64,000 nucleotides of DNA, taken from positions 62,001 through 126,000 of IMG/VR virus record IMGVR_UViG_3300027754_000034; one strand, given 5' to 3'. The position numbers and the translations under genes are program-made. Within the stretch, counting starts at the first letter, position 1. The number at the start of each line of letters is the position of its first letter. Below are positions 21,574-45,030 of the stretch, piece after piece. The notes under the pieces were generated by a model that was not told where the DNA came from, did not search any database, and worked only from the letters and a program-made list of their open reading frames with translations.

Positions 21574-22206
21574 GTGGTATCTCTGGAAATTAATAAAGAA
21601 TCAACTCAAAAGAAACCAGATCGTCTTCCTTGGCCAAGGAATGCGTTTGATGATGAGAAGGTGGCACTTGGTATTGACATTAGAAAGAAGAAACTAGATA
21701 TAGAAAAAATAGTATACAAATTTTTTAAAGTGGATGGTTATTCAATGGAGGATTTACTTCAAGAAGTCTATACTGCGATCATACATAAAAACACCACAAG
21801 AAGTGTTCACGATCCGAGGAAGTCATCTTTTGGTCATTATGTGTACATGGTAGCCAATAATGTGTGCATTAATATAGTATCCAAGAAAAAACGATATGAT
21901 AAAGAAAAAGATAGTATTTTTGAACCTAATCAAGAAACCGGTAAAACCTTAGAAGAGTCATATGAAAGCATATCAGATGGGCATGTGGAGAGTGAAAGCA
22001 TTTTGGCTCTAGAACTACGTCTGAGAAGAATGAAAAGACATGACTTAGCGAGGTATGTTAGAGCATCTCGTGTTGGGTCTTCCCCCGATATCATAAGAGC
22101 AGCATTATCTTATGGAGATAAAAAGGTATCTCATAAGATAATGAGAGATATGAGACATCAAGTAGTAACTATTGCTACGAATTTGTCGAATTCTTGGTCT
22201 TTATAG
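21574..22206 (+). CDS. Phage sigma-70-family (ECF-like) sigma factor
   Basis: Region 2 pattern EDLLQEVY...HDPRKSSFGHYVYMVANN; HTH-like C-terminus. Confidence 0.7.
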   Translation: MVSLEINKESTQKKPDRLPWPRNAFDDEKVALGIDIRKKKLDIEKIVYKFFKVDGYSMEDLLQEVYTAIIHKNTTRSVHDPRKSSFGHYVYMVANNVCINIVSKKKRYDKEKDSIFEPNQETGKTLEESYESISDGHVESESILALELRLRRMKRHDLARYVRASRVGSSPDIIRAALSYGDKKVSHKIMRDMRHQVVTIATNLSNSWSL

Positions 22207-24513: not shown

Positions 24514-25284
24514 ATGGTAATCATATCTTCTATACAATTCAAGCCTACTCTTGCAAGGAATAATGCGGATATCAGGGCTAACTTTAAAAAATGTGAAGAT
24601 TTAGTAAATGAAGCTTGGAAATTTGGTTCTGAACTAGTAGTATTCCCAGAGTTATGCCTTACCGGATATACTTTCTTGACATCGGAAGAGGCTTGGAAGG
24701 CTGCCGAGAGGTTTGATGGCCCCACTTTCAGAGAAATGAGAGGAGTGGCCACGGAACTATCTTCGTATGTGGTTTATGGGTTTTTGGAGGCCGATGGTGA
24801 TAAACTCCACAACAGTTCACTTATAATATCTCCTGATGGAGATATCGTTAGTCGATATAGAAAAGTAAACTTGTGGGGCAATGACTTCCTTTGGGCGACC
24901 CCGGGAACTGAAACCCCAACCGTCGTAAATACTGATTTTGGGACATTATCTCATATAATTTGCCGAGACATTAGGGCAAGAATACCATCTAACATCCCCA
25001 GACAGGCGTCCACGCCATTTTTTAAGGACATAAAACCAAAATATGTAGCTACATGTGCTAACTGGGGTAAGGGTGGATTCCCATCAACCACATGGATGGA
25101 TTTCGCAGCTAACCATAAATGCAATTTAATAATATCTAATAGGTACGGGCAGGAGACTAACAATAATTTTACCAATGACTTTGGTAATGGAGGTTCCCTC
25201 ATCATACAAAAGGATTGGAAAACTCATACCAATGGGTTAAAATTTAACTCAGATTGTGTAGTATCAGCTAGAATCGAGGATTAA
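24514..25284 (+). CDS. Carbon-nitrogen hydrolase (nitrilase superfamily)
   Basis: Glu-Lys-Cys triad: VFPELCLTGY, YRKVNL, ICRDI. Confidence 0.92.
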   Translation: MVIISSIQFKPTLARNNADIRANFKKCEDLVNEAWKFGSELVVFPELCLTGYTFLTSEEAWKAAERFDGPTFREMRGVATELSSYVVYGFLEADGDKLHNSSLIISPDGDIVSRYRKVNLWGNDFLWATPGTETPTVVNTDFGTLSHIICRDIRARIPSNIPRQASTPFFKDIKPKYVATCANWGKGGFPSTTWMDFAANHKCNLIISNRYGQETNNNFTNDFGNGGSLIIQKDWKTHTNGLKFNSDCVVSARIED

Positions 25285-25629
25285 ATGGCACAATTTAATA
25301 TGTGTGATAATTGTAACACTGACCGTAAAACAACATTATGTACTGGAGACTGTTCAAAAAACATATGGTTCGTAAATGGTAAATGCAAATTGGATGAAAT
25401 CACGTACGATACGGTTTATTACGTGCTACAAAAGAACAGATCTGCCAAGAAGGACCTATTAAGGATAACTGCCGACCCTAGTTTAGTCAGACTTGCTGAG
25501 TATACCAATCTAGTAAGTGATGAAATCAAAGATAATATGACCCCCTATAAAGTGATTAACAATCCCGCTCGCACTCTCCCTTTCTATAACTTATATGGTG
25601 GAAATTTAAATCGAAATTTTAAACCGTGA
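25285..25629 (+). CDS. Hypothetical protein
   Basis: 114-aa ORF abutting the nitrilase gene, Cys-rich N-terminus. Confidence 0.55.
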   Translation: MAQFNMCDNCNTDRKTTLCTGDCSKNIWFVNGKCKLDEITYDTVYYVLQKNRSAKKDLLRITADPSLVRLAEYTNLVSDEIKDNMTPYKVINNPARTLPFYNLYGGNLNRNFKP

Positions 25630-25643
25630 ATTCTTATTTCTGT

Positions 25644-25653
25644 CTGAGTGTAA
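25644..25653 (+). promoter_or_regulatory. Putative phage promoter motif CTGAGTGTAA
   Basis: The identical 10-mer lies upstream of mazG (here), recA (33770-33779, minus) and 40792..41073 (41082-41091, minus). TTGAGTGTAC lies upstream of polA. Confidence 0.6.
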
Positions 25654-25667
25654 CTTTCTGAATCATC

Positions 25668-26129
25668 ATGATGGCTCTAAGCAAAGCTGAATTTTTATCT
25701 TGCATATTAAAAGACATTCCGGAGGAACATAAATCGAAAATACTAGAGATTGCCAATCAATTAGAACTGAGAGATTCTATACAGGACTCTGTCATGGAAT
25801 CACATTCCATACTTTGCGATATCAAAGGTATGGGTGTTAATGACGCCTTCGGCAATGACCCCGCCATATTTTATGGACTTGCATTGGCCGGTGAATGTGG
25901 TGAATTGGCCAATAATCTGATTAAGGCTATGCGGGCTGGTGGGAGCCGAGAGGATAAGCACAGAGCTATATGCTCTGAGATTGCAGACGTCTATATTTAC
26001 ACAATATTATTAGCTCAAACGAACGATATCGACCTGGAGTCTATGGTTAGAGAAAAAGTACGAATTATCATTGATAGAGCTAGATCAGGGTATTATGGTG
26101 GAAAAATCCCAGGTCGCGTTAATAGCTAA
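25668..26129 (+). CDS. MazG-like nucleotide pyrophosphohydrolase
   Basis: LAGECGELAN...SEIADVYIY (ExxE...ExxD). Confidence 0.85.
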   Translation: MMALSKAEFLSCILKDIPEEHKSKILEIANQLELRDSIQDSVMESHSILCDIKGMGVNDAFGNDPAIFYGLALAGECGELANNLIKAMRAGGSREDKHRAICSEIADVYIYTILLAQTNDIDLESMVREKVRIIIDRARSGYYGGKIPGRVNS

Positions 26130-26758
26130 ACTTCTCTAACTTCTTCCTTATGCGTAGCAAGTTCGCACATGTTCAAATATAACTCTGATATCTTTTTCTG
26201 ATACCATTCATTCTCTTTTGCAGATTTTTCGTGCATAGCCATGAAATCTTGACGCATTTTATTAAGAAATGGGGCGATTTCTTGATTTCCCCTATTAAAT
26301 TCTCTTCTCATATAGTTAAATAAACTGATAAAATCACCAGCTTTTACTATAGTATCCACATACTTCGCATCCTCCCCATTTTTAGGGACAGAATCACTGA
26401 TTAATTCCTTAATGATTGATGGTAGATATTTTTCTACCATCATGTCTTCAGTGTCATCGACTGCTTTTTTAAGATCAGGATTCGCATACTTAAATGTCCT
26501 AACTACATCACCAGTTACACATTCTCCTATATCATGAATTAAAGCCTTTCTGAGAATGAATGTTTCTATACTATCATCCTGTTTATTCGTATTCTTACTT
26601 ATTGTTCTATGTAAGAGCACACTATGTAAAACAACCCAAAATGTATGCTGCGATACTGATTCTTGATATAATGAAGGAATGCTATTATATCTTATTACAT
26701 AGTCCAGACGCTTAACGTCCGCATGATCATCTACCAAAAATTTTTTCCAGTTAGTCAT
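26126..26758 (-). CDS. HD-domain 5'-deoxynucleotidase / dNTP phosphohydrolase (YfbR-like)
   Basis: RY...ESVSQH, ALIHDIGECVTGD, VKAGD. Confidence 0.88.
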   Translation of the reverse strand: MTNWKKFLVDDHADVKRLDYVIRYNSIPSLYQESVSQHTFWVVLHSVLLHRTISKNTNKQDDSIETFILRKALIHDIGECVTGDVVRTFKYANPDLKKAVDDTEDMMVEKYLPSIIKELISDSVPKNGEDAKYVDTIVKAGDFISLFNYMRREFNRGNQEIAPFLNKMRQDFMAMHEKSAKENEWYQKKISELYLNMCELATHKEEVREV

Positions 26759-26778
26759 TTGTCCTGAACTTGCTACTT

Positions 26779-26997
26779 TTATTTTCTGCTAGTATCTAAA
26801 ATAGCATTACATTTTACATTTGATTCGATTTGTGGAGTCAAATTATATGCAGTAGGTTTAAACCCTAGCACCATCAATGATCTTAACTCTTCAAACAATT
26901 GCGGGTCTGAACCATCAAAATGATAAAGGACCATGTCTCCTTCTTCATCAATATATTCTATTGACCACCTTTTTAAGTATGTTTCTGGTCTTTCCAT
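26779..26997 (-). CDS. Hypothetical protein
   Basis: 72-aa ORF in the minus-strand operon. Confidence 0.5.
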   Translation of the reverse strand: MERPETYLKRWSIEYIDEEGDMVLYHFDGSDPQLFEELRSLMVLGFKPTAYNLTPQIESNVKCNAILDTSRK

Positions 26998-27608
26998 GTT
27001 TTTAAAGCACTGATAGTTAAAACGGATGCTTTGAACAGTTCAGGGAATACCATAGTGTTCCATGTCCCATCTTCAAATACACCATATTCATTAGGAAATG
27101 TCATGTGTATGAAACCGGCTCTCGTAGGAAGACTTTTTAAGTCTATGTGCCTTCTAACACCGTAAAATACTGAATTGCAAACATGTGTGCCTGCAAATTG
27201 AGATATCTTGGCGGAAACACCACCTTCATTTACCATATCTTTTAAATAGTCTATTGGAAGAGTACTCTCATAAGCAGTAGGACCATTTAGATCTATTGGT
27301 CTTTCCTGGACAGGTATCTTGGAATTGTCACCCATGGAAGATAGTTCCACGTTGATTGCAAATCTTTCGAATCGGATAGGACCATTCTTTTTGGTGGCAC
27401 CATACATCAGTACAAAATCGGGTTTAAAATTAGATATTTCTGAACAAGCAATTTCTGTGCATTTTCTAAATAATTGTGGAAGTACTAATCCCCTGACTTC
27501 AATTCCAGGAATGCTAAATTCCTGTTTTTCCCATAAATTTGCTAAATCCCCACTTGGAGTGCGCTTAATACCCCATAGAGGTTCAAACCCAGTTATCAAT
27601 ACCTTCAT
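26973..27608 (-). CDS. pcp: Pyroglutamyl-peptidase I (peptidase C15)
   Basis: KVLITGFEP, RFERFAIN (Glu), AGTHVCN (Cys), GFIHM (His). Confidence 0.92.
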   Translation of the reverse strand: MKVLITGFEPLWGIKRTPSGDLANLWEKQEFSIPGIEVRGLVLPQLFRKCTEIACSEISNFKPDFVLMYGATKKNGPIRFERFAINVELSSMGDNSKIPVQERPIDLNGPTAYESTLPIDYLKDMVNEGGVSAKISQFAGTHVCNSVFYGVRRHIDLKSLPTRAGFIHMTFPNEYGVFEDGTWNTMVFPELFKASVLTISALKTWKDQKHT

Positions 27609-27671: not shown

Positions 27672-28322
27672 ATGGAAATGAGTCATATACCGGTTCTTTG
27701 GCAACAGACATCTTCTGCAGGATTCATATTTAAAGTAACCAGTACTGGAGAGACCGTTTACGTTTACGCCAGAAATAGATACGCAGTTTGTTGTCTGGAG
27801 AAGTTCTCTATGCCTAGGCAGAATAACTCCCATATCTGCACTTTAGAATCTGTTCTTGTAGACTGTAAATCAGTACCTATAGTTTATCCAAAAGCTCGGG
27901 AAATTCCATATACTGAATTCGTTCTGAACTTCATTGATAGAAGAATTCTCATGTCTGATGTCGTCGTGTTCAACTGTTTTGGAAGCAGTCTCGATGCTGA
28001 TGGTTGGGTTCAAGTAAAGAAAATCATTAGCAAAGAAAAGGCTGATAAAGAAAAGGCTGATAAAGAAAAGGCCGTTGTAAGTAATCGTGATATCTTCCGT
28101 ATTACAACGGATTCTCCTATTTTCGCTAAATCATATGAAGCTGAAATTAAACACACTAGTCATCGTTCTAAGCCCAATGAAACAGTTCTGAAAGCTTTGC
28201 AAGGACTGGGGTACTCTAAACAGTCAGTAAATTCTTGGGCATCTGAGTACGACTCATCCGGTAAATCGAATGGGGATATGGTTAAAGCTGGCTGCAAGAT
28301 GATTGCACAAAAGGCATCATAA
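27672..28322 (+). CDS. Unknown N-terminal domain fused to a RuvA C-terminal (domain III)-like module
   Basis: C-terminal TVLKALQGLGYSKQSV...SNGDMVKAGCK matches RuvA-CTD; (KEKAD)3 linker. Confidence 0.6.
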   Translation: MEMSHIPVLWQQTSSAGFIFKVTSTGETVYVYARNRYAVCCLEKFSMPRQNNSHICTLESVLVDCKSVPIVYPKAREIPYTEFVLNFIDRRILMSDVVVFNCFGSSLDADGWVQVKKIISKEKADKEKADKEKAVVSNRDIFRITTDSPIFAKSYEAEIKHTSHRSKPNETVLKALQGLGYSKQSVNSWASEYDSSGKSNGDMVKAGCKMIAQKAS

Positions 28323-28327
28323 ATCAC

Positions 28328-28630
28328 ATGAGTATGAACCTAAAAAATAAATATAATTCAGAAAATTACAATGTTAGACATTCTCCCTTGGATATAGAGA
28401 GCGAACTTACTCAAAGTAATAATTACTATATAGCTATCTCCGATAGTTTCAATTCATCTACCAGAGAATATGTAATCGATAGGGCTAGCTCTGCGAACCA
28501 ACACATAAACTCATCTGAGTCCTTAATATCTAAATTCCTTAAATTTTCAATTTCATTATTTTTAATATTCTCTTCTACCCTAATATTAATGTTTATCATC
28601 GCATTTATTATTACAATCAAGAAATTGTAA
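28328..28630 (+). CDS. Membrane protein (C-terminal TM helix)
   Basis: Hydrophobic C-terminus. Confidence 0.5.
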   Translation: MSMNLKNKYNSENYNVRHSPLDIESELTQSNNYYIAISDSFNSSTREYVIDRASSANQHINSSESLISKFLKFSISLFLIFSSTLILMFIIAFIITIKKL

Positions 28631-28638
28631 AATTTTAT

Positions 28639-29106
28639 ATGTTAGTAACCAAATTTGAAGGATCGAAACTACTTAAATTATATGTCCCGAATTATTATTA
28701 TAGTGAAGAAGTAAGAATAGATAAACAAGACCCGGTGCCTTTTAATGATAGCACACTGATTTGCCCGAAAGTCCACTTTGAATTACCAGACGGGAAATGG
28801 TTTGGCATGGACAATGGAATAATAGAGAAATTCGATATAGATAGAGAATGGGATTGGCGAATACTCAAGGCCAGAAAGAAAATAGACTCCATGATGGAGG
28901 ATCCTGAAATTATATCTGACGGGTTTAAACAACTACAAATATTGGAGTCCTCTTCTACATTATGTGGTATAGACCTCCCCGAATTCGTCCAAATGTTGCA
29001 ACAATCAGCAACGGATGGGGAAGATTTAGAAACCACGTTTAATAGAATAAAAGATGAACACGATAAAATATATAATGACGCTAGTAAACGTAATGAATCT
29101 AAGTAA
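28639..29106 (+). CDS. Hypothetical protein
   Basis: 155-aa ORF with a TGTAA motif upstream. Confidence 0.6.
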   Translation: MLVTKFEGSKLLKLYVPNYYYSEEVRIDKQDPVPFNDSTLICPKVHFELPDGKWFGMDNGIIEKFDIDREWDWRILKARKKIDSMMEDPEIISDGFKQLQILESSSTLCGIDLPEFVQMLQQSATDGEDLETTFNRIKDEHDKIYNDASKRNESK

Positions 29107-30764: not shown

Positions 30765-31274
30765 GTGGAATACATATCATATAGCGACATAGCCCTAAAA
30801 ATTTCTTCGACAAAGATAGCCCTTGTTCCAGAAAAAGAGGGTGCTTATGGAGCACCTGATGGTCAGATCATTTCTCTACTCAAGGACTTATTATGCTGCA
30901 AATACTCTATAGACGCTGCCTATCGTAGCTTTGCGGACAGAGTAAGGGGTCCTTGGAGAGATGCCCTTGTAGAACACTGGAAGGACCATGCTAAAGAAGA
31001 ACGCTCCGCAGCTTACGATATAGCCATGAAAATTGTAGGGATGGGTGGAGATCCATTTCTACACATGTTATCGATCCCCGAATGTCCCGCCAATGTTGAA
31101 GCACTATGTGCTTGCTTGGCTCAAATGGAATTAAATTTGATTGAAACTAGCCGAGCACTAATAGGATGTTCCGGGGACAATACGGCCATAAGAGTCATGG
31201 CTGAGAATATTATTCTAATAGATACTCAACACTTAGATGACCTAAAAAGAATGTGCGTTCAATTAGCTGTGTGA
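30765..31274 (+). CDS. Ferritin-like (bacterioferritin/Dps-fold) protein with IA leader
   Basis: Four-helix pattern Y..F...VRG...EHWKDHAKEER...KIVGMGGDP...E...QHLDDL. Confidence 0.75.
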   Translation: MEYISYSDIALKISSTKIALVPEKEGAYGAPDGQIISLLKDLLCCKYSIDAAYRSFADRVRGPWRDALVEHWKDHAKEERSAAYDIAMKIVGMGGDPFLHMLSIPECPANVEALCACLAQMELNLIETSRALIGCSGDNTAIRVMAENIILIDTQHLDDLKRMCVQLAV

Positions 31275-32428
31275 TTGTCTGCCAGGTGTGGTTTATCGCA
31301 AGTGGGACAACGCGGGATCTTTTCTATCTCTTGGTTAACGATTAAGAGATCTGCGTCTATCTCTTTCAGTATCTTTTTAGATTTTACACATTCGTTGGCT
31401 TGATTCGTTAATCTAACGTTCAATGCCATTAATTCGATATATTGTGAGTATGACTTCACAGGTTCTGGAATATCTTTTATCGGACCATAAGCGTCACCTT
31501 TAAGTCTATCTATTTTTTTCGAAATATTTTTTAACTCTATATAATTACTCACCTCATTGATTTCATCAGGTATTTTTGTCTTCTTAATACTGTTAAGTGG
31601 AATAATACCACTAGCATGTTTGCTTATGTTTTCCTCAATCCTGCTCAAGGATTTCCACACGTCTACCTCCTGAAAATCGACCTTATCGATCAGTATCACC
31701 TTCTCGATTTCTTTAACGTGGTCTATCGACGTTTCAAGACTTTTTACTTTTTTGGAGAATTTATCTAGTAATTCAATGCTGTTCGAATAATCTAATATTG
31801 ACTTAAATTGATCTTCCAGGTCCTGCTTGATATTGTTAAGTTCCTCCAGAGCTGTTAATTTTTCCAGTACCCCCTTAAGATTTTTAGACTCTTCGGATCG
31901 TGCATTTGATTCATCATTATGTTTTCTTTTGCCCTTAGCACATAATGTAATGGCGTCTTGTAGTACATTTAGCCTTGATACTTCTGATATGAAGTCTGTT
32001 ACTTGGGAACCAGGCTTATCTAACAAGAATATGGGAGAAAATTGTGAAGCCAACCATGGATGGATATTATCACTACCTACATTTACCGGCTTAAACCCAA
32101 ACGAAGCTATTTCATCTAACTGTTTTGCTCCTACTTTATCTAAGGTTTTCCCGCCGATAATGTATCGATTTATACCCTTCTCACCCTTTTCCCATGTGTA
32201 AGCCCAGTCCTCACACTCCATAGAAACTGTGCTATGACTTGCTCCTTTCCTAACCATCCCTATTACTGAATTATTTAGTATAGAAGAGGAAATCGCTCTA
32301 ACAATAGCACTTTTCCCGATGTTAGTCACACCAACTAGACATGTAAATCCTTTTATTTCAAATTCAATGTCTTTAATGCTCTGAAAATTCTTGATCCGTA
32401 CTTTTATTGGCTTTAAATTTTCCGACAT
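31259..32428 (-). CDS. SbcC/Rad50-like ATPase, N-terminal half ending in Zn hook
   Basis: IKNFQSI, GVTNIGKSAIVRAI, Q-loop region (SQF), coiled coil, terminal CPTC. Confidence 0.82.
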   Translation of the reverse strand: MSENLKPIKVRIKNFQSIKDIEFEIKGFTCLVGVTNIGKSAIVRAISSSILNNSVIGMVRKGASHSTVSMECEDWAYTWEKGEKGINRYIIGGKTLDKVGAKQLDEIASFGFKPVNVGSDNIHPWLASQFSPIFLLDKPGSQVTDFISEVSRLNVLQDAITLCAKGKRKHNDESNARSEESKNLKGVLEKLTALEELNNIKQDLEDQFKSILDYSNSIELLDKFSKKVKSLETSIDHVKEIEKVILIDKVDFQEVDVWKSLSRIEENISKHASGIIPLNSIKKTKIPDEINEVSNYIELKNISKKIDRLKGDAYGPIKDIPEPVKSYSQYIELMALNVRLTNQANECVKSKKILKEIDADLLIVNQEIEKIPRCPTCDKPHLADNHTAN

Positions 32429-32438
32429 TATTCTACTA

Positions 32439-33755
32439 TCAAATATCTGAGGTATCGATTTCCGAGGTTTCTACGCCATCATCATCATCAACACCCATAT
32501 CAGCGGGTGTTACGTAATTTGTGGTGGAATCGTCCAGATAGTCGTCATCTTCATCCATCCTTTTCGTAATTGCGTCTTCTGCTAGTGAGGCCAACTGTTC
32601 ATCATCAATAGCTCTAAATCCTTGAATAATTTTATCTCTACACATACTCATCATTTCTTCAAACATCACACTATCTTTCTGAATGGCTACTCTAAATTTT
32701 TCTATTCCTATTGCTTCTACTTCCTTGCCTGTAGCTGGTGATTTGTAAGTATATATATCTTGCTTTCTAGCGTTTTTACTGTGTTTTACTATTCCATATG
32801 CCTCGGCGACATTCATCATGGTTCTTAGTTCATCAATTCCAACACCGTAACGAATAGTTATGAGACCCGTGTGTCCCTGGCGTGCATCGATCTTGTTTTT
32901 AATATTCTTTACTTCAATATCTGTCGATACAGGAACTTCCTCGTATTCTTTAATAATCGGATTCCAAATTTTCGCCTTAGCAGATTGCTTAGGCTTTAAC
33001 ATGAGCCGAATGGAAGACCAAAACTTAAGAGCATTGCCTCCCGTAGTGCTCTTTAAAGCTTCTTCAGTATATCCCATAGCTCCTATCTTATCACGAGTCT
33101 GATTTGTGAAAATTAAGCAGGTACCCGTTTTAGCAATGATGGCTTGAATCTTTGGCATCCAAGTACTCATAAGTCTTGGGATTTCCGCCATGCCCTGCTT
33201 CTCTTTTTCGTTAGCTACATTTCTTTGGATCTCACGCCGAGACACTAGACCTGCTACTGAGTCTACTACGATTAGATCTATACCATGAAGCGCAGCCCCA
33301 TTAACTAGACTCTCCGTTTCCTCGAAGGTATGGGGCTGTACACGAATCGCGTTGCCTGACCCTCCTAATTCTACGGGTCTAAAATCGACTCCTAATTTCA
33401 GAGCATATGCATCAATAACTGCATGCTCCAGATCTACATAAAGAACGCTCCCAGTGCCGCCTTTAGATGCAATTGCTTGCCCTGCAGCCATTAAGGCAAT
33501 CGTGGACTTACCTGATGATTCACGACCATATACCTCAACTATCTTGCCTCGTGGCCATCCAGGGCAAAGAAATGATCCATCAGGAAGTCTAGAACCACCT
33601 ATAAGGAGATTTAATACTGTGGACCCAGTATTAATGTGCTCCATCTTCAATGATGGAGTCACTAACATATCTTTCATGTTCAACCCGGTTCGTTTCTCCA
33701 TGGTTGATAAGAATTTCGCAATGTTTGGATGAATTTTTGCTGTTTGCTTGGCCAT
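32439..33755 (-). CDS. recA: RecA/UvsX recombinase
   Basis: GKIVEVYGRESSGKST, VVDSVAGL, IFTNQTR, TTGGNALKFWSS, KNKI. Confidence 0.96.
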   Translation of the reverse strand: MAKQTAKIHPNIAKFLSTMEKRTGLNMKDMLVTPSLKMEHINTGSTVLNLLIGGSRLPDGSFLCPGWPRGKIVEVYGRESSGKSTIALMAAGQAIASKGGTGSVLYVDLEHAVIDAYALKLGVDFRPVELGGSGNAIRVQPHTFEETESLVNGAALHGIDLIVVDSVAGLVSRREIQRNVANEKEKQGMAEIPRLMSTWMPKIQAIIAKTGTCLIFTNQTRDKIGAMGYTEEALKSTTGGNALKFWSSIRLMLKPKQSAKAKIWNPIIKEYEEVPVSTDIEVKNIKNKIDARQGHTGLITIRYGVGIDELRTMMNVAEAYGIVKHSKNARKQDIYTYKSPATGKEVEAIGIEKFRVAIQKDSVMFEEMMSMCRDKIIQGFRAIDDEQLASLAEDAITKRMDEDDDYLDDSTTNYVTPADMGVDDDDGVETSEIDTSDI

Positions 33756-33819: not shown

Positions 33820-34032
33820 ATGGGTAAACGGAATTCACGAAATCGTAAAACACCGCAAGTTAAGTCAATGCAAGAATTTTGCAACGATTTAAAAATTGCT
33901 AAAATAGATGAAGTTCATGAATTGAAGCAGTCAGAATTGGAAAAAAAGTATAAGGAGCAAGAAGATAAAATGATCATATTGATGTACGGTAACTATTCGA
34001 CGGAAGAAGGACCTTCACAAGATTCTAAATAG
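33820..34032 (+). CDS. Hypothetical protein
   Basis: 70-aa ORF with a TTTATCTT motif upstream. Confidence 0.45.
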   Translation: MGKRNSRNRKTPQVKSMQEFCNDLKIAKIDEVHELKQSELEKKYKEQEDKMIILMYGNYSTEEGPSQDSK

Positions 34033-34724
34033 CTTAATAAATTAGTGTTAATGTCCGTTTTTTTCGGAAGATCTATTCTTCCTTCTGGTATTTTTGAAAA
34101 TTCGAAAAATCTGCTATTTTCTCTAAATATATGGGCTATTTTTATGTTTGCAGTTCCCTTTAGCGTTTTCACCTTCTTCGTTTTTTCTAAAAATACTCTG
34201 AGTTCATTATCACTTAGCATATCAGGTGATAAGAGACCATTTTTTAATGACATAAACCTTGTGCTGAAATATGAAATGCAATAAGCGTCGGCTTCGTTAT
34301 TATCTATAAGTTCAGAATCATTCGTATCGAATTGCACGAATTTCTGCATATCCAATTTGGTTACTAGTCCTCTGACACTCTTTCGCCCCCTGACCAATGA
34401 CTTTAAAGTAGCGGGATCGAAAAGCACCACATCCTTCCTTGATTCAAATATTGCTTCTAAGCAAAACATCATTAAGCTATGATGTACAGTTTGGTATGGA
34501 CCTGCCCCATATGCTGGGCTTTCAATACCTACGACATCTGGTTCGAAGGTATTCAGGAGCCTCTTTACCAGAGACCTATAATGAACATACCTAGCAACAG
34601 GAACTGTTGAAGGAAATGTCTCTTCATGCCCGGAAGAGATTCTTCTTTCCGTTCCAGTCGCCTGGTTATCAAAGACGGCCCATCCGAAGCCTCGGAGGGA
34701 TGGGTCTAATCCTAAGGATCTCAA
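33993..34724 (-). CDS. ruvC: RuvC-like Holliday junction resolvase
   Basis: LGLDPSLRGFGWAV, VGIES, TLK...K, NEADA. Confidence 0.85.
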   Translation of the reverse strand: MRSLGLDPSLRGFGWAVFDNQATGTERRISSGHEETFPSTVPVARYVHYRSLVKRLLNTFEPDVVGIESPAYGAGPYQTVHHSLMMFCLEAIFESRKDVVLFDPATLKSLVRGRKSVRGLVTKLDMQKFVQFDTNDSELIDNNEADAYCISYFSTRFMSLKNGLLSPDMLSDNELRVFLEKTKKVKTLKGTANIKIAHIFRENSRFFEFSKIPEGRIDLPKKTDINTNLLSYLESCEGPSSVE

Positions 34725-35321: not shown

Positions 35322-36767
35322 TCAGGCTCCTGTTCCAGTTAGTAGTCCAAAGCGTTGCAATGTTTTGTAAGCATCATCCAACATCGACTGAGCAGTAGAT
35401 GTGTAAGTAGCTGGAGCACTCACGTTTCCACCAGTATTAGCTCTCGGTCCAGTTGCTGTCGCTTTATTAAAAAATCCTAATTTCGAATTTGCATTTGAAC
35501 ATATGTTTACATTGTCTCCGTTCATATTAACATTCTTGAATCCACCAGTCCCATAATGCCCTATATTTATAGTCTGTGTGCCGGTATTGTTGCCCTGAAA
35601 CCCGATATTTATCGAATATGTATTAACGGATGTACCAATTGAAATACTGCCAGTACTAGCACTGCTCCCAACCGTTATATTTCCATTACCAGTAGTCAAA
35701 GAAAACGCACCGTTAGCAGCAGAGGTATCTAGCGTCATGCCGCCCGAACCTGCACGAACAGTCGTAACCGATCCGGATCCAGCAGAGTCTGCTCCCGTAG
35801 AACCAACAGTTATCGCTGTTCTCCCAGATCCAGCACCTATAGATATGGAGGTTAAACCTGCCCCTGATGAGCCACCGCTTCCTATGTTAATTGACTGTGT
35901 AGCACTTGTGACTGTGGTACCATTGCCAAAGAAAATGGTATTTGATGCGGTAGAACCGCCAATAGTCATGGTTCCTGTGCCACAAGTTAGTTGAAAATCA
36001 CCGTTGTTTGTACCTATAGCCATACCCCCCGAACCTGCTGAGAGTGTTAAAGACGAAGTACTAGTACCGTCACCTACCGAGTTAGAAGCTGTGGTACTTC
36101 CGGTAAGTGTTAAAACACCGCCTGACTGATTTAAAGGTCCTTCTAGTTTTGTCGTACCAGCTTGTACCCAAACAGCGTAAGCATTAGTTAATGTAGCAGA
36201 AGCGCCCTGGGTAGGTGCACCAGTTATCGCTAGTGTAGCAGCTGTTCCTATTATTCTAGTAGCACCACTACCAGCATATGTTGGAGCCTGTAAAACAAAG
36301 GCCCTTTGGGTAGGAACGTTGCCTGTAAATGTAACGGTGCGCGCTAAATTAATATTTACATCATTAGATTCACTCGTTTGCGATGTATGTGCGCCGCCAT
36401 TGATGACTATAAGATAGGCCCCCGTAGTAGAAGAAGCGGCCTGAGTTAACGTCCATGATTTTCCGACAGCACCAGACCAGGATAAGGAACCTGTTGGTAA
36501 TGCTGTGTCTCCTGTCATGGAGCCCAAACTTAAGGCTCCGCTGCCCGCTGAAGCACTTATCGCCTTGCCTGCAGCCAGGCTAATTCCATTTCCATCTATA
36601 CTAGCAGTAGTGGTACCATTATTTTGAAAGTTAATGCCGCTTGCTCCACTGAGAGTTAGAGCGCCTGTTGAAGTACCCCACGTAGAAGCTGCGGCGGCTG
36701 TTAACGTTAAGGCTCCCGAAGTGGTACTCCATGTAGAAGCTGCGGACCTAAATTCTTGTGTTATCAT
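35322..36767 (-). CDS. Gly/Ser/Thr-rich fibre/adhesin-like virion protein
   Basis: Repeats AASTWxTxxGALTL and xINIGxG beta-solenoid units; AGGAGG RBS upstream. Confidence 0.7.
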   Translation of the reverse strand: MITQEFRSAASTWSTTSGALTLTAAAASTWGTSTGALTLSGASGINFQNNGTTTASIDGNGISLAAGKAISASAGSGALSLGSMTGDTALPTGSLSWSGAVGKSWTLTQAASSTTGAYLIVINGGAHTSQTSESNDVNINLARTVTFTGNVPTQRAFVLQAPTYAGSGATRIIGTAATLAITGAPTQGASATLTNAYAVWVQAGTTKLEGPLNQSGGVLTLTGSTTASNSVGDGTSTSSLTLSAGSGGMAIGTNNGDFQLTCGTGTMTIGGSTASNTIFFGNGTTVTSATQSINIGSGGSSGAGLTSISIGAGSGRTAITVGSTGADSAGSGSVTTVRAGSGGMTLDTSAANGAFSLTTGNGNITVGSSASTGSISIGTSVNTYSINIGFQGNNTGTQTINIGHYGTGGFKNVNMNGDNVNICSNANSKLGFFNKATATGPRANTGGNVSAPATYTSTAQSMLDDAYKTLQRFGLLTGTGA

Positions 36768-36840
36768 TGTGAAGATCCTCCTGATATTAAAGTAAGCATG
36801 TCTCTCTCTACCTTTATATTAAAAATTATAAACTTAAATT

Positions 36841-36871
36841 AAAAAGGGGCAGGAACTTTTCCTCCTTGCCC
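36841..36871 (-). terminator. Intrinsic terminator (minus strand)
   Basis: GGGCAAGGA...TCCTGCCC stem followed by a T run on the minus strand. Confidence 0.6.
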
Positions 36872-37144
36872 TACCATGAATGTAAAGCTATGAAGAACCC
36901 GATACATCTTCTGCCCGATTCTCTGTGAAAATGATAATAAATTGTAAATACGGATGAGGCCCCCATCTTACCGGGAGCCTCATTATGGTCAATACAAAAG
37001 TTATCGGGACTCACCATATCAGGAGCACATTGATGAGGCTAATTAGGATCCAGAATCTAAATATATATTCCCATATGTAATGCCTACCGCCTCTAGCAAA
37101 AGATCTTAGAATAGATGGTCAAGTAGTACATGTTAATTTAAACA

Positions 37145-38194
37145 TTACGCGGCCATTGCTTTACGTGCTCGTCTCTTTGTTTGAGCCTCCATCCTGCAAA
37201 TTCCGCATTTATACCTAATTCCACCAGTTTTATTAGGGATTTTTTCACATTTTTCGAAGGGCACTAACCCATGATGTTTACATATTTTATGAGTCTTTGT
37301 GGTAGTCTTGGAAGAAATAGACTCAGATATCTTTAATCTGGATTCATATGACCATTTACGATCTCCCCGTTTAGCGAGTACCTCAGGTCGTGAATGAATC
37401 TCCTTGGATATCCTACTAGCTTTAATTTTTGATTCCGGCATAGACCAATATTCCGATATAGACTCGGCCAGTCTCTTTTTAACTTCATCTTTATTCACGG
37501 CTAATTTAATCTTTTCTCGCACCTCAGGAGTCGCAGAGCGAGACGACCTTGATATTTTATCTTTATGTTCCTGGCTTAATACTTTTCCTTTTTGAGCTTG
37601 GGAACACTTCGCTCGTGCCTCTGGCCTGCTGGCTCCATCACGAATTTTTTCTATGAACTTGGACCTGTATTCAGGGTCTGAATTTAATCTCTCGGCAAAT
37701 AATCTATACTTTGCTAATGCTTCGGGAGAAACGGTTCTTTCACGATTCCGAATTGAAATGGGAATCATTTTCTCCCGATAATCGGGACGATCCCAAGGAT
37801 TCTTTATAGGATGATGGGTATGAGACCCGCCTCGTTTCATGTTAAAACCCCTTATGGGGTTAGTCGTATCGTATAATTCGATCCAGTATTCTTCAGCTAT
37901 ATTGGCAGATTCCAGGTCATGGCAAACCTGAAGTATTTCATGATCGAATGCTTCGGGTCCGTAAAGCCTAATAGTATTATACCAATGATTATCTAGAATT
38001 TTCTTTCTAGCGTTATTTTTTGCTTTAGAAAGGTGTTCAGACCACCTTCTCTCCCATCTTTTGCTGGTTAATCCGATATATCTCCTACCGGATTCTCTAT
38101 GAAAATGACAGTATATGGTGTATATAGATGAGGCCTCCGTTTTACGGGAGGCCTCATCTAGTTTGTGGTTTTGTTCCATAAGGGACTTTACCAC
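37145..38194 (-). CDS. Free-standing GIY-YIG homing endonuclease with NUMOD3-like repeats
   Basis: YTIYCH...RYIGLT, RW..H, E.YWI, GFNMKRGG; repeats such as LSQEHKDKIS and SYESRLKIS. Confidence 0.88.
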   Translation of the reverse strand: MVKSLMEQNHKLDEASRKTEASSIYTIYCHFHRESGRRYIGLTSKRWERRWSEHLSKAKNNARKKILDNHWYNTIRLYGPEAFDHEILQVCHDLESANIAEEYWIELYDTTNPIRGFNMKRGGSHTHHPIKNPWDRPDYREKMIPISIRNRERTVSPEALAKYRLFAERLNSDPEYRSKFIEKIRDGASRPEARAKCSQAQKGKVLSQEHKDKISRSSRSATPEVREKIKLAVNKDEVKKRLAESISEYWSMPESKIKASRISKEIHSRPEVLAKRGDRKWSYESRLKISESISSKTTTKTHKICKHHGLVPFEKCEKIPNKTGGIRYKCGICRMEAQTKRRARKAMAA

Positions 38195-38210
38195 ACATGT
38201 TGCTAATACA

Positions 38211-39086
38211 TCATTGGAGAAAATCGTCGTAGCTTGATACTAGTTTTGGAGACTCTGCTTCACCTGAACCGACCTGAGAATTACCTCCACCGAGGAGCTT
38301 CTCACGAAGCTTATCGATTTTCATATCGAACCCGAGATTATTGGATACATGCTTCCAATTGCGGAGACCCTGATCTAAAACCCAACTACGGATTTCAGAG
38401 TCCATTTTGCCCTTAGCCCAAACAGCAGAGCTACCAGCAGTGATTACCTGCTTTTGATACTTAGGATCTCCATCGAGAGCCACAATAAGATCGATTGTAG
38501 ATTTTTCTTCTGCACGTGCTTCCTTATAGACATCCTCGATCTGCCTAAACTTCTTCGCTGTCATCCGCCAGACAGCGAAATTTACATATTTCTTTGCGTT
38601 AAGGAGTTCCTCATCTACCTGAACCCCATCCTTAACAGGATAAGTCATGACGATCATCCCTACGGTCTGATCAGCATCACCCATTTTGTTGCAGCAAAGC
38701 TCGGGCTTGACTACAGTCTTACCTTCATATTGGCTCAGGCAGCGAATTGATCCGAGACCATCACGATAGTGGGTCCATGCAAATGCGAACTTAGGAGATT
38801 TGATATCTAACCGATCAACCTCAGTAAGTTGTTCTACTGGCTTACTAAGCTGATCAGCAATCTTTTTATCGATCTTTGCGATAAGATCTGCCTTCTCTGC
38901 GTCGGTAAGAGGAGCACCTTTCTCTCTTGCCTTCGCCACGAGAACCCCGTCATGAACTCTTTTAAAGGAAACTATGGAGAGCCTGTCTTTTTGGCCGCTT
39001 CTTGTTTGCTTAAAGCGGTCAATGCCTTGACTCTTGATTACTGTTCCCTCTTCAAACCCGAATTCGATTACTGAATTATCTGACAT
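38211..39086 (-). CDS. Probable single-stranded DNA-binding protein (gp32-like)
   Basis: Lies in the recombination cluster, H..C...CC metal site, acidic tail SYDDFLQ, codon bias suggesting high expression. Confidence 0.55.
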   Translation of the reverse strand: MSDNSVIEFGFEEGTVIKSQGIDRFKQTRSGQKDRLSIVSFKRVHDGVLVAKAREKGAPLTDAEKADLIAKIDKKIADQLSKPVEQLTEVDRLDIKSPKFAFAWTHYRDGLGSIRCLSQYEGKTVVKPELCCNKMGDADQTVGMIVMTYPVKDGVQVDEELLNAKKYVNFAVWRMTAKKFRQIEDVYKEARAEEKSTIDLIVALDGDPKYQKQVITAGSSAVWAKGKMDSEIRSWVLDQGLRNWKHVSNNLGFDMKIDKLREKLLGGGNSQVGSGEAESPKLVSSYDDFLQ

Positions 39087-39172
39087 GTTATTCTCGCTTT
39101 GACTTTGAACCGTTGTACGCTTAAAGTTAACAATTAACTTAAACGTTTTTTTACATTACATTCCGAATCGGC

Positions 39173-39799
39173 CTACTTCAGCCACACCTGTTGCGGATCG
39201 CCGTCGTCCGTGCACCAATTTTGCCATTTATGGGTTCCCTGAAGCGATTCGATAAGGTTATGGGACACAACGGAGAGATCCTTAAGGGTAAAGAATTCCT
39301 CTCGGAAGCTGCTATCCGGCATCGCCTTGCAGGCTTCATGTACAGCCATGCTATATACGAAGCCGGTCATTGGCGGGATCATGACACCAATCATAGAAAG
39401 GACGCCTTGGAGCCTTGAAAGGATTCCTTTACCTCCCATCGAGTGCTCGGTGACGAGCACGGCGGCTGGTTTTCCTGCCATACAGTAATGGTCGTTCACG
39501 AGAGTCATCCGTTCCAGCATCTGTTGGAGCTTACTGGACCACGAATCCCAGTAGGTGCCGGTCGTGAAAACGTACCCGATGGCACCGTGCATCGTATCTC
39601 GTAGATCTCCCCATGGAGCTTGCGGGTCTACTAGCACGATCTCATATCCAGCTTCTACCAAGGCGTCGATTACTGTCTTGACCAGGATTTTCGTGTTCCC
39701 ACCAAGCCCGCCCTCAATAACAGCCACATACCGTGTATTGCATATGGGTATATCGAGGTTACTTCGAAGCGACCCCAAGTCTAGGTCAGACACGTTCAT
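39173..39799 (-). CDS. Flavodoxin-like / NADPH-dependent FMN reductase
   Basis: GLGGNT, YVFTTGTYWDSWSS, GKPAAVLVT, GGKG; noticeably higher GC than its neighbours. Confidence 0.78.
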   Translation of the reverse strand: MNVSDLDLGSLRSNLDIPICNTRYVAVIEGGLGGNTKILVKTVIDALVEAGYEIVLVDPQAPWGDLRDTMHGAIGYVFTTGTYWDSWSSKLQQMLERMTLVNDHYCMAGKPAAVLVTEHSMGGKGILSRLQGVLSMIGVMIPPMTGFVYSMAVHEACKAMPDSSFREEFFTLKDLSVVSHNLIESLQGTHKWQNWCTDDGDPQQVWLK

Positions 39800-40042
39800 G
39801 ACTTTTCCTCCATCAAAGCTTCCATCTCGTCCACCTCTTTATTACACCGTGGACAGAAAACGCACGCGGGAAACCAGTCATATACTCGCACTTTCTTCTT
39901 ACATATAAAGCATAGGTGGGTGCAAATGAAGATGCGCTTTACCTTCATGAGAGGGCATGGGCGTTCACTTCGAGCCAATCAAACGTCTCGTGTTGTGGAG
40001 AAGTCTAATATTCTATGTAGTCTAATATTTTTCATAGTGTTC

Positions 40043-41520: not shown

Positions 41521-42468
41521 TCAGTTATATTTTTCGACATGATTAATGCCTGATTTAGTAATTACTCTTCCCGAACTTATTTTGTTTACGAACCCTGAAT
41601 GAATTAGGAAAGGTTCAATCACAGACTCAATAGTGTCTGAATCGATATTAATGGAAGCGGAAATTGTATTCAATCCGACAGGTTTATTCATATTACGAAG
41701 TAAACGCAGATAGTGGCGTGAATTCTTATCTAGTCCTAACTCATCAATCCCTAGGTGTTCACACACTCTTCCGACAATTTCTTGATCGATATTTGTAAAT
41801 GAATAAGCCAGCGCAAAGTCTTGAATTCTACGAATTAATCTGTTAGCGATCCGAGGAGTACCCTTGCATCGTTTGGCAAGTTCTAAAGAAGCATCCTGAC
41901 TAATGGTTAATTCTAGCTTTTCCATATTATGAGAAATGATGGTAGCCATATCATGGTCTGAATAAGGTTCCATCTGAAGAATCTCACCAAATCTGTCTAG
42001 AAGAGGTTTTGATATCTTCCCTGGAACGGTAGTAGCGCCCACCAAAGTAAAGGGTTCTAATTCAATACAGATAGTTTCTCCGTTTGCGATAATGTCTAAC
42101 TTAAAATCCTCCATAGCTGTATAAAGTATTTCTTCAATTTTCGGGTTCAATGCATGAATTTCGTCAATAAATAAGATATCTTTATTTCCAAGACTAGCAA
42201 TCGCTGATATTAAGTCACCTTTATTCTGGATAGTAGCGGCATTAATGGTATGTAAAGTAGCACCGATTTCACAAGACAATGCATTAGCCAACGAGGTTTT
42301 ACCTAAACCTGATGGTCCTGAAATCAAGATATGATCAACCGGAGCATTCCGCTTCTTTGCAGAAGCTACAAAAACGCGCAAGTTGTCAATAATGTGCGCC
42401 TGACCAATGTAATTGGAAAAATCAGTGGGTCTAAGGGCTCGGTCGTGCTTCATGAAGGAATGACTCAT
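41521..42468 (-). CDS. ruvB: Holliday junction branch-migration ATPase RuvB
   Basis: ALRPTDF...YIGQ, GPSGLGKT, LFIDEIH, LYTAMEDF, FTLVGATT, DRFG, GTPRIANRL. Confidence 0.97.
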   Translation of the reverse strand: MSHSFMKHDRALRPTDFSNYIGQAHIIDNLRVFVASAKKRNAPVDHILISGPSGLGKTSLANALSCEIGATLHTINAATIQNKGDLISAIASLGNKDILFIDEIHALNPKIEEILYTAMEDFKLDIIANGETICIELEPFTLVGATTVPGKISKPLLDRFGEILQMEPYSDHDMATIISHNMEKLELTISQDASLELAKRCKGTPRIANRLIRRIQDFALAYSFTNIDQEIVGRVCEHLGIDELGLDKNSRHYLRLLRNMNKPVGLNTISASINIDSDTIESVIEPFLIHSGFVNKISSGRVITKSGINHVEKYN

Positions 42469-42483
42469 CTAATGGATGAATTT

Positions 42484-42678
42484 TCACATGGCATGAACAG
42501 CGTTTAAAATACCTAATTTACAATTATTCCTATAAGGGGATTGTATATTTGGTATGATGTTTGACGTTTTGGTTTTGTCTTCAGGATGACCCAGTACTCC
42601 GCATTTTTGACATTTATACGTCAAATTACTGCCTCTTAGTAATTCCCACTCATGTTCAGTTTCCATCAGTATCCCCAA
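42484..42678 (-). CDS. Hypothetical protein
   Basis: 64-aa ORF, HxW...CxxCG. Confidence 0.5.
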   Translation of the reverse strand: MGILMETEHEWELLRGSNLTYKCQKCGVLGHPEDKTKTSNIIPNIQSPYRNNCKLGILNAVHAM

Positions 42679-45015: not shown

Positions 45016-45030
45016 AATAACTCACTTTTG

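What the first reader, a model, noticed from the sequence alone, without database searches (positions are those of the whole stretch)
27672..28322. Novel protein ending in a RuvA domain III module: non-canonical adaptor for the phage RuvB?
Seen: the C-terminal TVLKALQGLGYSKQSVNSWASEYDSSGKSNGDMVKAGCKMIA aligns without gaps to the RuvA C-terminal domain pattern (A-L-x-x-L-G-Y...S-x-x-x-[LM]-[IV]-[RK]). It is joined to an unrelated N-terminal domain through a linker containing (KEKAD)3. The window has ruvB and ruvC but no full ruvA. Known: RuvA domain III is the module that binds and activates RuvB. Inference: the phage redirects a RuvB motor (its own or the host's) to a new substrate, or inhibits host RuvAB.
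Basis: partly seen in the sequence, partly recalled or inferred. Interest (0 to 1): 0.62.

Follow-up and report, generated by a model that had tools for sequence, protein, structure and literature searches.

The report
Phage RuvB adaptor with RuvA tail
A huge freshwater phage encodes a small protein whose tail is a true copy of the RuvA module that grips the RuvB DNA motor, joined to a head domain of unknown fold, so it probably stands in for RuvA in the phage's own DNA-recombination machinery.

Summary
The ORF (27672..28322, +, 216 aa) is real. It belongs to a previously undescribed family found only in phages: 42 representatives at 50% identity, all about 160-240 aa. The C-terminal 45-50 residues are a genuine RuvA domain III. 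The family profile's 11 best PDB hits are all RuvA domain III, 32 of 43 members hit Pfam RuvA_C, and the three best structural matches among 48,161 chains are RuvA domain III. The equivalents of E. coli RuvA L167 and L170, which are needed for RuvB function, are conserved. The N-terminal roughly 108 residues fold with high confidence but match no known fold, and they are not RuvA domains I/II. No canonical ruvA was found in 257 kb of this phage or in a complete 436 kb relative. The gene sits in a conserved block with phage RecA and a RuvC-like resolvase. This phage and two other lineages also carry a RuvB with a clade-specific 4-residue deletion in the hairpin that RuvA contacts. A complex model docks the tail on that hairpin (0.62 against a best control of 0.14). 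One complete relative keeps the family but has no RuvB. Best reading: a RuvB-binding adaptor that replaces RuvA. Binding and function are inferred, not shown.

The parts
27672..28322 (+). Whole ORF, 216 aa (P0001), a member of a new phage-only family of about 200-aa proteins
   Evidence: There are 42 family representatives and both halves are conserved. The start Met-Glu is shared by most members.
27672..27995 (+). N-terminal alpha/beta domain (residues 1-108), strand-strand-helix-strand-strand followed by three short helices. Acidic across the family, with no known fold.
   Evidence: AF2 pLDDT 90.9, pTM 0.82. Best PDB match Z 4.2, no RuvA domain I/II among the rows shown. Foldseek PDB and BFVD give nothing at E<=0.001. 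No Pfam or PHROG family. Median pI 5.0.
27996..28088 (+). Predicted long charged helix (residues 109-139). It contains the 15-bp tandem repeat at 28032-28072 that encodes KEKAD x2.7.
   Evidence: helix; repeat, 100% match. The repeat is absent from the 50%-identical ortholog.
28089..28175 (+). Low-confidence, probably disordered linker (residues 140-168). In the family, the whole stretch between the N-domain and domain III varies from 14 to 70 residues and is mostly acidic.
   Evidence: pLDDT 47-53 over residues 141-160. Family statistics.
28176..28319 (+). RuvA domain III homolog (residues 169-216), a three-helix bundle. L176, L179, G180 and Y181 correspond to E. coli RuvA L167, L170, G171 and Y172.
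   Evidence: sequence; structure; conservation: L176 and G180 in 43/43; docking. PMC2628435 for L167/L170.
28328..29106 (+). Two co-directional downstream ORFs: 100 aa with a hydrophobic C-terminal stretch, and 155 aa. They travel with the gene in relatives. Function unknown.
   Evidence: tblastn: the 155-aa ORF is 54% identical in L003 and 31% in L009 and L023. No Pfam or PHROG family.
41521..42468 (-). Phage RuvB (315 aa), the probable partner
   Evidence: Its closest relatives form a phage-clade group.
42058..42099 (-). RuvB beta-hairpin equivalent to E. coli L135-L152, the RuvA contact. It is 4 residues shorter than in bacterial RuvBs and is the modelled docking site.
   Evidence: Alignments. 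Interface. PMC2628435 for the hairpin's role.
33993..34724 (-). RuvC-like Holliday junction resolvase, in the same syntenic block
   Evidence: phrog_159, E 6.8e-17. Conserved next to RecA in all long family loci.
32439..33755 (-). Phage RecA, in the same syntenic block
   Evidence: Pfam RecA, E 1.7e-43. 59-78% identical in relatives.

Best explanation
The gene encodes a RuvB-binding adaptor that takes RuvA's place in the recombination system of a clade of huge (about 430 kb) freshwater and environmental phages. Its C-terminal three-helix bundle is a true RuvA domain III. It docks on the beta-hairpin that protrudes from RuvB's ATPase domain, using the same leucines that RuvA uses. A variable acidic linker tethers it to a novel N-terminal domain, which replaces RuvA's DNA-binding domains I/II and presumably supplies target recognition, either of a branched DNA or of a phage recombination protein. 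In this phage the partner is the phage's own RuvB, whose RuvA-contact hairpin carries a clade-specific 4-residue deletion. In relatives without a ruvB the host's RuvB would have to serve. Shown here: the domain identity, the family, the absence of canonical RuvA, the synteny with RecA and the RuvC-like gene, and the modified hairpin. Inferred: physical binding (model only), the positive adaptor role, and anything about what the N-domain recognises.
For: The tail is RuvA domain III. The family profile's 11 best PDB hits are all RuvA domain III at the chain's C-terminus (best E 2.5e-4). 32 of 43 members hit Pfam RuvA_C (best E 1.7e-8). Relatives score 48 and 26.4 bits, over the 24-bit cut-off. 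The three best of 48,161 chains are RuvA domain III: Z 5.3/5.2/4.9, rmsd 2.0-2.7 A over 47-49 residues. Contact residues are conserved: L176 43/43, L179 as L/M/I, G180 43/43, Y181 as F/Y. These match E. coli L167 and L170, whose mutation abolishes RuvB activity in vivo (PMC2628435). Docking: ipSAE 0.62 in three runs against a best control of 0.14. That mark was reached by 51 of 78 solved complexes and 2 of 108 mismatched pairs. The runs agree in at least 98% of contacts and the partner pLDDT is 84. The interface is RuvB 125-135 (the hairpin) and partner 170-181 plus 200-213. No RuvA_N in G000, G001 (257 kb) or the complete G002. No HHH_5 in G001. The only RuvA_C match in each genome is this gene. 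The block RuvC-like, RecA, ATPase, ferritin, family gene is conserved. The family occurs with a short-hairpin RuvB in three lineages. The hairpin deletion is confined to the phage-clade RuvBs: 14 short against 107 canonical.
Against: There is no experimental evidence of binding. The complex model could score well from memory of solved RuvA-RuvB complexes (the caveat). A complete 436 kb relative has the family but no RuvB, and another relative lacks RuvB at the syntenic site, so the family does not depend on a phage RuvB. The N-domain is acidic and has no recognisable DNA-binding motif. Generic UBA domains score nearly as well structurally (Z 4.3-4.6). About 40% of this phage's genome is unseen.
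Confidence: 0.55

Rival explanations
1. It is a decoy or inhibitor of host RuvAB. The domain III tail occupies the RuvA-binding hairpin of the host's RuvB, blocks loading by host RuvA and shuts down host branch migration or fork reversal. The N-domain only adds bulk or oligomerisation.
For: The family is retained in a complete phage genome with no RuvB of its own. The N-domain is acidic, with no HhH or other DNA-binding signature. The RuvB-less lineages carry the more RuvA-like tail subtype.
Against: In three lineages it coexists with a phage RuvB, and it is modelled onto that RuvB. An inhibitor that also blocks the phage's own motor would be self-defeating unless the shortened hairpin excludes it, and the model argues against that. 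It lies in a conserved recombination block with RecA and a RuvC-like resolvase. A bare decoy would not need a roughly 108-residue N-domain conserved over the whole family.
Confidence: 0.2
2. The tail is a UBA-like protein-interaction module that has drifted away from RuvB and now binds another partner. The protein's function would then have nothing to do with RuvB.
For: RuvA domain III belongs to the UBA-like folds, and UBA domains score Z 4.3-4.6, close to RuvA's 4.6-5.3. This protein's own RuvA_C score is below threshold. RuvB is absent from one complete relative.
Against: The sequence evidence points specifically to RuvA: 11 of 11 top PDB hits, and 32 members hitting RuvA_C against 1-2 for each UBA family. 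The residues equivalent to RuvA's RuvB-contact leucines are the most conserved in the whole protein. The docking model passes its controls.
Confidence: 0.12
3. It is simply a very divergent canonical RuvA whose domains I and II have decayed beyond sequence recognition.
For: The total length (about 200 aa) and layout (core, then flexible linker, then C-terminal domain III) mirror RuvA. Profile positions 150-205 of 210 align with E. coli RuvA residues 150-201 of 203.
Against: A confident model (pLDDT 90.9) shows four strands with an intervening helix, then helices without Gly-rich hairpins. That is neither an OB barrel nor two HhH motifs. RuvA chains are among the representatives searched (they match the tail), yet none appears in the rows shown for the N-domain, where the lowest Z is 2.3. 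No member hits RuvA_N or HHH_5. The N-domain profile finds no RuvA in the PDB.
Confidence: 0.05

Closest known systems
Bacterial RuvA (Holliday junction recognition subunit of RuvAB; Pfam RuvA_N + HHH_5 + RuvA_C)
   Same: About 200 aa. A homologous C-terminal domain III follows a flexible linker. The equivalents of L167, L170, G171 and Y172 are conserved. Modelled contact with the RuvB beta-hairpin. Encoded alongside RuvB, a RuvC-like resolvase and RecA.
   Different: No OB-fold domain I and no helix-hairpin-helix domain II. These are replaced by an acidic alpha/beta domain of unassigned fold plus a long charged helix. Found only on phage contigs. Not adjacent to ruvB (13 kb away here), and present in some genomes that lack ruvB.
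Isolated RuvA domain III as used in solved RuvB complexes (1IXS, 7PBL-7PBT, 7X7P)
   Same: The tail superposes on these chains (7pbp_G: Z 5.2, rmsd 2.0 A over 47 residues; 7pbm_H: rmsd 1.3 A over 40 columns). The family profile aligns to them at E 2.5e-4 to 1.5e-3.
   Different: Sequence identity is only about 19%. One subtype of the family, including this protein, has a loop 2-3 residues shorter between helices 2 and 3, and a conserved Trp and Cys not seen in RuvA.
UBA-like three-helix domains (UBA, SOUBA)
   Same: The same small three-helix bundle. Structural Z is 4.3-4.6.
   Different: Sequence profiles favour RuvA_C overwhelmingly (32 members, against 1-2 for each UBA family). The context is DNA recombination, not ubiquitin.
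Jumbo-phage RuvC-like resolvases without RuvB (Iyer et al. 2021, PMC7824862)
   Same: This clade also carries a RuvC-like resolvase next to recombination genes.
   Different: [quoted passage not shown] This clade has a RuvB in several lineages, plus a RuvB-binding module.

Membership tests
Canonical RuvA | N-terminal OB-fold domain I (Pfam RuvA_N) | tested here: not met
   No RuvA_N hit in the protein, in any of the 43 family members, or in genomes G000-G003. The model topology is not an OB barrel, and no RuvA chain appears among the N-domain fold matches shown.
Canonical RuvA | Domain II with two helix-hairpin-helix motifs (Pfam HHH_5) | tested here: not met
   No HHH_5 hit in any member or in G001. 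The N-domain profile finds no RuvA in the PDB.
Canonical RuvA | C-terminal domain III after a flexible linker | tested here: met
   The profile aligns to RuvA residues 150-201 of 203. The model has a low-confidence linker followed by a three-helix bundle. RuvA domain III gives the three best structural matches.
Canonical RuvA | Tetramer that binds Holliday junctions | not testable with these tools
No oligomer or DNA modelling was available.
RuvA domain III (Pfam RuvA_C, PF07499) | Sequence match at or above the curated cut-off (24 bits) | tested here: inconclusive
   This protein scores 12.8-15.6 bits, below the cut-off, and its ortholog 20.7 bits. Relatives in G003 and G002 score 48 and 26.4 bits, above it. 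32 of 43 members match at E<=0.1, the best at 1.7e-8. Membership holds at the family level, not for this sequence alone.
RuvA domain III (Pfam RuvA_C, PF07499) | Three-helix bundle that superposes on solved domain III | tested here: met
   2ztc_A Z 5.3, 7pbp_G Z 5.2 (rmsd 2.0 A over 47 residues), 1ixs_A Z 4.9. 7pbm_H TM 0.70. Atlas RuvA_C cluster TM 0.84.
RuvA domain III (Pfam RuvA_C, PF07499) | Conserved hydrophobic residues that contact RuvB (E. coli L167, L170) | tested here: met
   L176 is Leu in 43/43. Position 179 is L (35), M (7) or I (1). G180 is Gly in 43/43. The mapping comes from the alignment, and the role of L167/L170 from PMC2628435.
RuvA domain III (Pfam RuvA_C, PF07499) | Binds the RuvB beta-hairpin | tested here: inconclusive
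   Complex model: score 0.62 against a best control of 0.14, with the interface on the hairpin. This supports binding but does not show it, and it may reflect memory of solved complexes.
GIY-YIG nuclease (considered for the N-domain) | GIY-YIG fold with catalytic Tyr/Arg/Glu, detectable by profile | tested here: not met
   Only faint structural echoes: UvrC and I-TevI at Z 2.6, Atlas TM <=0.48, BFVD E >=0.069. hhalign against the window's own GIY-YIG protein gives probability 0.13%. No member hits Pfam GIY-YIG.
UBA domain | Sequence match to the UBA families | tested here: not met
   UBA 1, UBA_7 2 and UBA_6 1 of 43 members, all E >= 0.0067, against 32 for RuvA_C.

The most novel reading that the evidence does not exclude
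The phage clade runs an orthogonal branch-migration system. Its RuvB hairpin has been shortened by four residues so that it no longer answers to host RuvA, and it is paired with a private adaptor whose new N-terminal domain directs the motor to a substrate or partner other than the classical RuvA-bound Holliday junction. That partner could be the phage RuvC-like resolvase, RecA filaments or replication intermediates. This would be the first non-RuvA loader of a RuvB motor.
Probability: 0.25. Interest if true: 0.8.

Novelty: new variant of a known kind. Interest (0 to 1): 0.62.

Why it matters
RuvB is the textbook example of a motor that depends on one dedicated partner, RuvA. Here a natural protein family keeps only RuvA's RuvB-binding module and swaps the DNA-recognition core for a different domain. 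If it works as proposed, the motor can be re-targeted. It would offer a compact handle for recruiting RuvB, and a test case for how domain III alone regulates the motor. It would also revise the view that phage RuvC-like resolvases work without a RuvB-type motor (PMC7824862). The paired change in the RuvB hairpin is a candidate example of co-evolution that insulates a phage machine from its host counterpart. The N-terminal domain, confidently modelled but matching nothing known, is a good target for structure determination.

Tried and rejected
Searches that found nothing:
- PHROGs and PADLOC have no family for the protein.
- tblastn of the protein and megablast of 24 kb against 50,697 GenBank phages found nothing.
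- The ESM Atlas feature search gave no usable hit.
- Literature searches for RuvA_C in phages, phage RuvB or RuvA-like proteins found nothing relevant.
- The species-genome scan with the family motif found no relative.
- The only sequencing run holding this DNA is a freshwater DNA metagenome that may be its source, and no RNA run holds it. Read laying was therefore not used, and there is no expression evidence.

Weak hits judged to be chance:
- PTS_2-RNA, E 0.037.
- Ulp1 protease, E 0.32.
- Sorcin, E 1.2.
- S1/CSD-like domain in the ortholog, E 0.14.
- ATfaRel2 antitoxin for the N-domain: Z 4.2, Foldseek E 0.025-0.06. This is too weak to assign a fold.

Leads rejected:
- GIY-YIG for the N-domain, rejected by profile comparison.
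- A difference in tail type between RuvB-bearing and RuvB-less lineages. None was found.

Technical dead ends:
- The search for related loci failed with the full family alignment because no stretch was conserved enough. It found nothing with P0007 alone.
- Metagenome records behind L019, L021 and L023 could not be searched or extended.
- One look-up was lost to a minus-strand coordinate slip and then corrected.
- My minus-strand references that end 3 bases short drop the start codon, not the stop. RuvB residue numbers are therefore the ORF residue minus 1.

Full report
**1. The observation**

The ORF 27672..28322 (+) is present and encodes the 216-aa protein with the quoted tail. The KEKAD repeat is a perfect 15-bp tandem repeat of 2.7 copies at 28032-28072.

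The window is part of a 126,943-bp IMG/VR viral contig that CheckV rates 30% complete. A near-identical 257,205-bp contig (G001, 60% complete) carries the same gene. A complete relative with terminal repeats is 436,316 bp (G002). So this is a clade of huge phages. The only sequencing run that holds the DNA is a freshwater metagenome.

RuvB at 41521..42468 (-) is unambiguous. The 'ruvC' is ORF 33993..34724 (-), a phage-type RuvC-like resolvase (phrog_159, E 6.8e-17). RecA is at 32439..33755 (-).

**2. Is the tail RuvA domain III?**

On its own the protein gives only a sub-threshold Pfam RuvA_C match: E 0.18 for the whole protein, and E 0.023 for residues 160-216. RuvA_C is nevertheless the only family that matches the tail, and a 50%-identical ortholog scores better (E 6e-4, profile positions 6-42 of 47).

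An exhaustive profile search found 42 representatives at 50% identity. All are 159-240 aa, and both halves are conserved. At the family level the assignment is firm:
- 32 of 43 members hit RuvA_C individually, the best at E 1.7e-8. UBA-type families account for 4 hits in total.
- The family profile's 11 best PDB hits are all RuvA. Each matches domain III at the C-terminal end of the chain. Examples are 1ixs_A at E 2.5e-4 and E. coli RuvA residues 150-201 of 203.
- Members in two other phage genomes exceed the Pfam cut-off, at 48 and 26.4 bits.

The structure agrees. An AF2 model built on the family alignment has mean pLDDT 86. Among 48,161 PDB representatives, its three best matches are RuvA domain III: 2ztc_A Z 5.3, 7pbp_G Z 5.2 (rmsd 2.0 A over 47 residues) and 1ixs_A Z 4.9. 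Generic UBA domains follow closely at Z 4.3-4.6. Structure alone would therefore not decide the question. Sequence does.

**3. RuvB-contact residues**

In E. coli RuvA, domain III spans residues 155-203. L167A and L170A abolish RuvB activity in vivo without affecting junction binding. The RuvB beta-hairpin L135-L152 is the RuvA contact (PMC2628435).

Through the alignment, L167, L170, G171 and Y172 correspond to L176, L179, G180 and Y181 of this protein. Across 43 members:
- L176 is Leu in all 43.
- G180 is Gly in all 43.
- Position 179 is L, M or I.
- Position 181 is F or Y in 42.

Of the three invariant columns in the whole-protein alignment, two are L176 and G180.

**4. Modelled complex**

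The tail (residues 160-216) was folded with the phage RuvB.
- Score: 0.62 in three runs, against a best control of 0.14.
- Calibration: that mark was reached by 51 of 78 solved complexes and 2 of 108 mismatched pairs.
- Consistency: the runs agree in at least 98% of contacts, and the partner pLDDT is 84.
- Interface on the partner: residues 170-181 and 200-213.
- Interface on RuvB: residues 81-91 and 125-135. These use the numbering of the query, which lacked Met1, so ORF numbering is +1.

By the alignment, RuvB 123-136 is the equivalent of E. coli L135-L152. The model therefore places the tail on the known RuvA-contact hairpin.

This supports binding but does not show it. Because RuvA-RuvB complexes have been solved, the pass may partly reflect memory of them.

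**5. The N-terminal domain**

Folded alone, residues 1-140 give a very confident model (pLDDT 90.9, pTM 0.82). The layout is strand, strand, helix, strand, strand, three short helices, then a long helix spanning 109-137.

It has no convincing structural relative:
- The best of 48,161 chains is Z 4.2, to a 74-residue antitoxin.
- Foldseek against the PDB and against BFVD finds nothing at E<=0.001.
- The Atlas gives TM <=0.48.

No RuvA chain appears among the rows shown, although RuvA representatives are in the library. No member hits RuvA_N or HHH_5. The N-domain profile finds no RuvA in the PDB. So this is not a decayed RuvA core.

GIY-YIG nuclease domains recur faintly in three searches (Z 2.6, TM <=0.48, E >=0.069). 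A profile comparison with the window's own GIY-YIG protein is negative, at probability 0.13%.

The domain is acidic across the family (median pI 5.0). The stretch between the N-domain and the tail varies from 14 to 70 residues and is mostly acidic. The tail is basic, with a median pI of 9.4. What the N-domain recognises is unknown.

**6. Genomic context and co-occurrence**

No RuvA_N match exists in G000, G001, G003 or the complete G002. No HHH_5 match exists in G001. In each genome the only RuvA_C match is this gene, and each genome has one copy.

In every long family locus, including G002, the gene lies in the same block: RuvC-like, RecA, a 389-aa ATPase/exonuclease-like ORF, ferritin, the family gene, peptidase C15, then the HD phosphohydrolase.

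RuvB is rare in GenBank phages. It occurs in 34 of 50,697 records, all 44% identical or less, and mostly in fragments or prophage edges. [quoted passage not shown]

In this clade RuvB is facultative:
- Present with the family in G000/G001, in G003 (45% identical, 9 kb from the family gene) and on a 52 kb Logan contig (L028/L031).
- Absent from the complete G002, where the weak RuvB_N hits are a clamp loader and a generic AAA protein.
- Absent next to the sigma factor in an L023-type relative, where ours has it.

No RuvB-bearing contig that reaches the family's position lacks the family. Two others, L029 and L030, end before that position.

**7. A modified RuvB hairpin**

I aligned the 120 best relatives of the phage RuvB plus the G003 copy. 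The segment between the MED-F/Y motif and the PFTL motif is 16 residues in the phage RuvB, its 12 closest relatives and G003. It is 20 residues in all 107 others. The deletion removes the tip of the hairpin that RuvA contacts.

The three short-hairpin contigs I examined all belong to this phage clade. This fits co-adaptation of motor and adaptor, but that is an inference.

The tails of family members from RuvB-bearing and RuvB-less phages show no systematic difference.

**8. Interpretation**

*Shown:*
- A new phage-only family with a fixed two-domain architecture.
- A genuine RuvA domain III tail with its RuvB-contact residues conserved.
- A non-RuvA N-domain.
- No canonical RuvA in the sequence available.
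- Conserved synteny with RecA and a RuvC-like resolvase.
- A clade-specific change in RuvB's RuvA-contact hairpin.

*Inferred:*
- The tail binds RuvB (about 0.75).
- The protein acts positively, as a substitute for RuvA that recruits RuvB to a target chosen by the N-domain (about 0.55 overall).

The main rival is a decoy that blocks host RuvAB (about 0.2). It is favoured by the RuvB-less complete genome and the acidic N-domain. It is disfavoured by coexistence with, and modelled binding to, the phage's own RuvB. The other rivals are a drifted UBA-like module with another partner (about 0.12) and a decayed canonical RuvA (about 0.05).

**9. Novelty**

No Pfam, PHROG or PADLOC family covers the protein or its N-domain. 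No GenBank phage has a relative. None of 185,579 species genomes matched the family motif. No paper found describes it.

The RuvB-binding module is known, but the architecture and the partner change are new. I rate it a new variant of a known kind.

**10. Limits**

Nothing here is experimental. The genome is incomplete. Co-occurrence rests on a handful of contigs. No expression data exist.

Noticed in passing
window 42058-42099 (-), and P0045-P0058, L014, L028-L030: The phage-clade RuvBs share a 4-residue deletion at the tip of the beta-hairpin that RuvA contacts: 14 sequences short, 107 bacterial-type relatives canonical. These RuvBs are also shorter overall (304-324 aa against 327-340).
   Followed up: yes
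window 28328-28630 and 28639-29106 (+): Two small ORFs immediately downstream of the family gene and co-directional with it. The first has a hydrophobic C-terminal stretch. The 155-aa one is conserved in relatives (54% in L003, 31% in L009 and L023). Relatives show the same arrangement of three genes, sometimes with 4-bp overlaps. Function unknown; they may be partners.
   Followed up: partly
window 36000-40000; ORFs 37145-38194 (-) and 39173-39799 (-): A GC-rich island (0.444, against about 0.37 elsewhere) holds a GIY-YIG endonuclease (E 6e-9) and an FMN-reductase-like gene between the RuvC-like gene and RuvB. It may be a mobile insertion, which would explain the larger distance between the recombination block and RuvB in this phage.
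   Followed up: no
window 31259-32428 (-): A 389-aa ORF next to RecA, conserved in all relatives (33-57% identical). It has faint AAA_15/AAA_23 (SbcC/RecF-like) hits and a weak PHROG 'exonuclease' match. It is probably another recombination or repair component of the block.
   Followed up: partly
window 42656-43642 (-) and 21574-22206 (+); L029, L030: A full sigma-70-type factor lies directly beside RuvB, and a second faint sigma-like ORF lies elsewhere in the window. Relatives carry two to three sigma factors within 20 kb, which suggests phage-controlled transcription programmes.
   Followed up: no
window 24514-27608 and 30765-31274: A cluster of metabolic and housekeeping genes that is unusual for phages but conserved in the clade: CN hydrolase, a MazG-like pyrophosphatase, a YfbR-like HD 5'-deoxynucleotidase, pyroglutamyl peptidase (Peptidase_C15, E 7.5e-36) and a ferritin-like protein.
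   Followed up: no
window 45030-45117 (-) and 45144-45971 (-): A tRNA-Ser (GGA) gene next to a DNA methyltransferase (phrog_56, E 9e-66).
   Followed up: no
L014 1051-2208 (-), in G003: The open frame of the G003 RuvB is about 70 residues longer at the N-terminus than other clade RuvBs. This could be a real extension or just an upstream open frame. The contig's proteins also look richer in Arg, Ala and Gly, so G003 is probably a GC-rich member of the clade.
   Followed up: no
window 28032-28072 (+): The KEKAD-encoding 15-bp repeat is 100% identical between copies and absent from the 50%-identical ortholog. It is therefore a very recent in-frame expansion within a length-variable segment, not a functional signature of the family.
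   Followed up: yes
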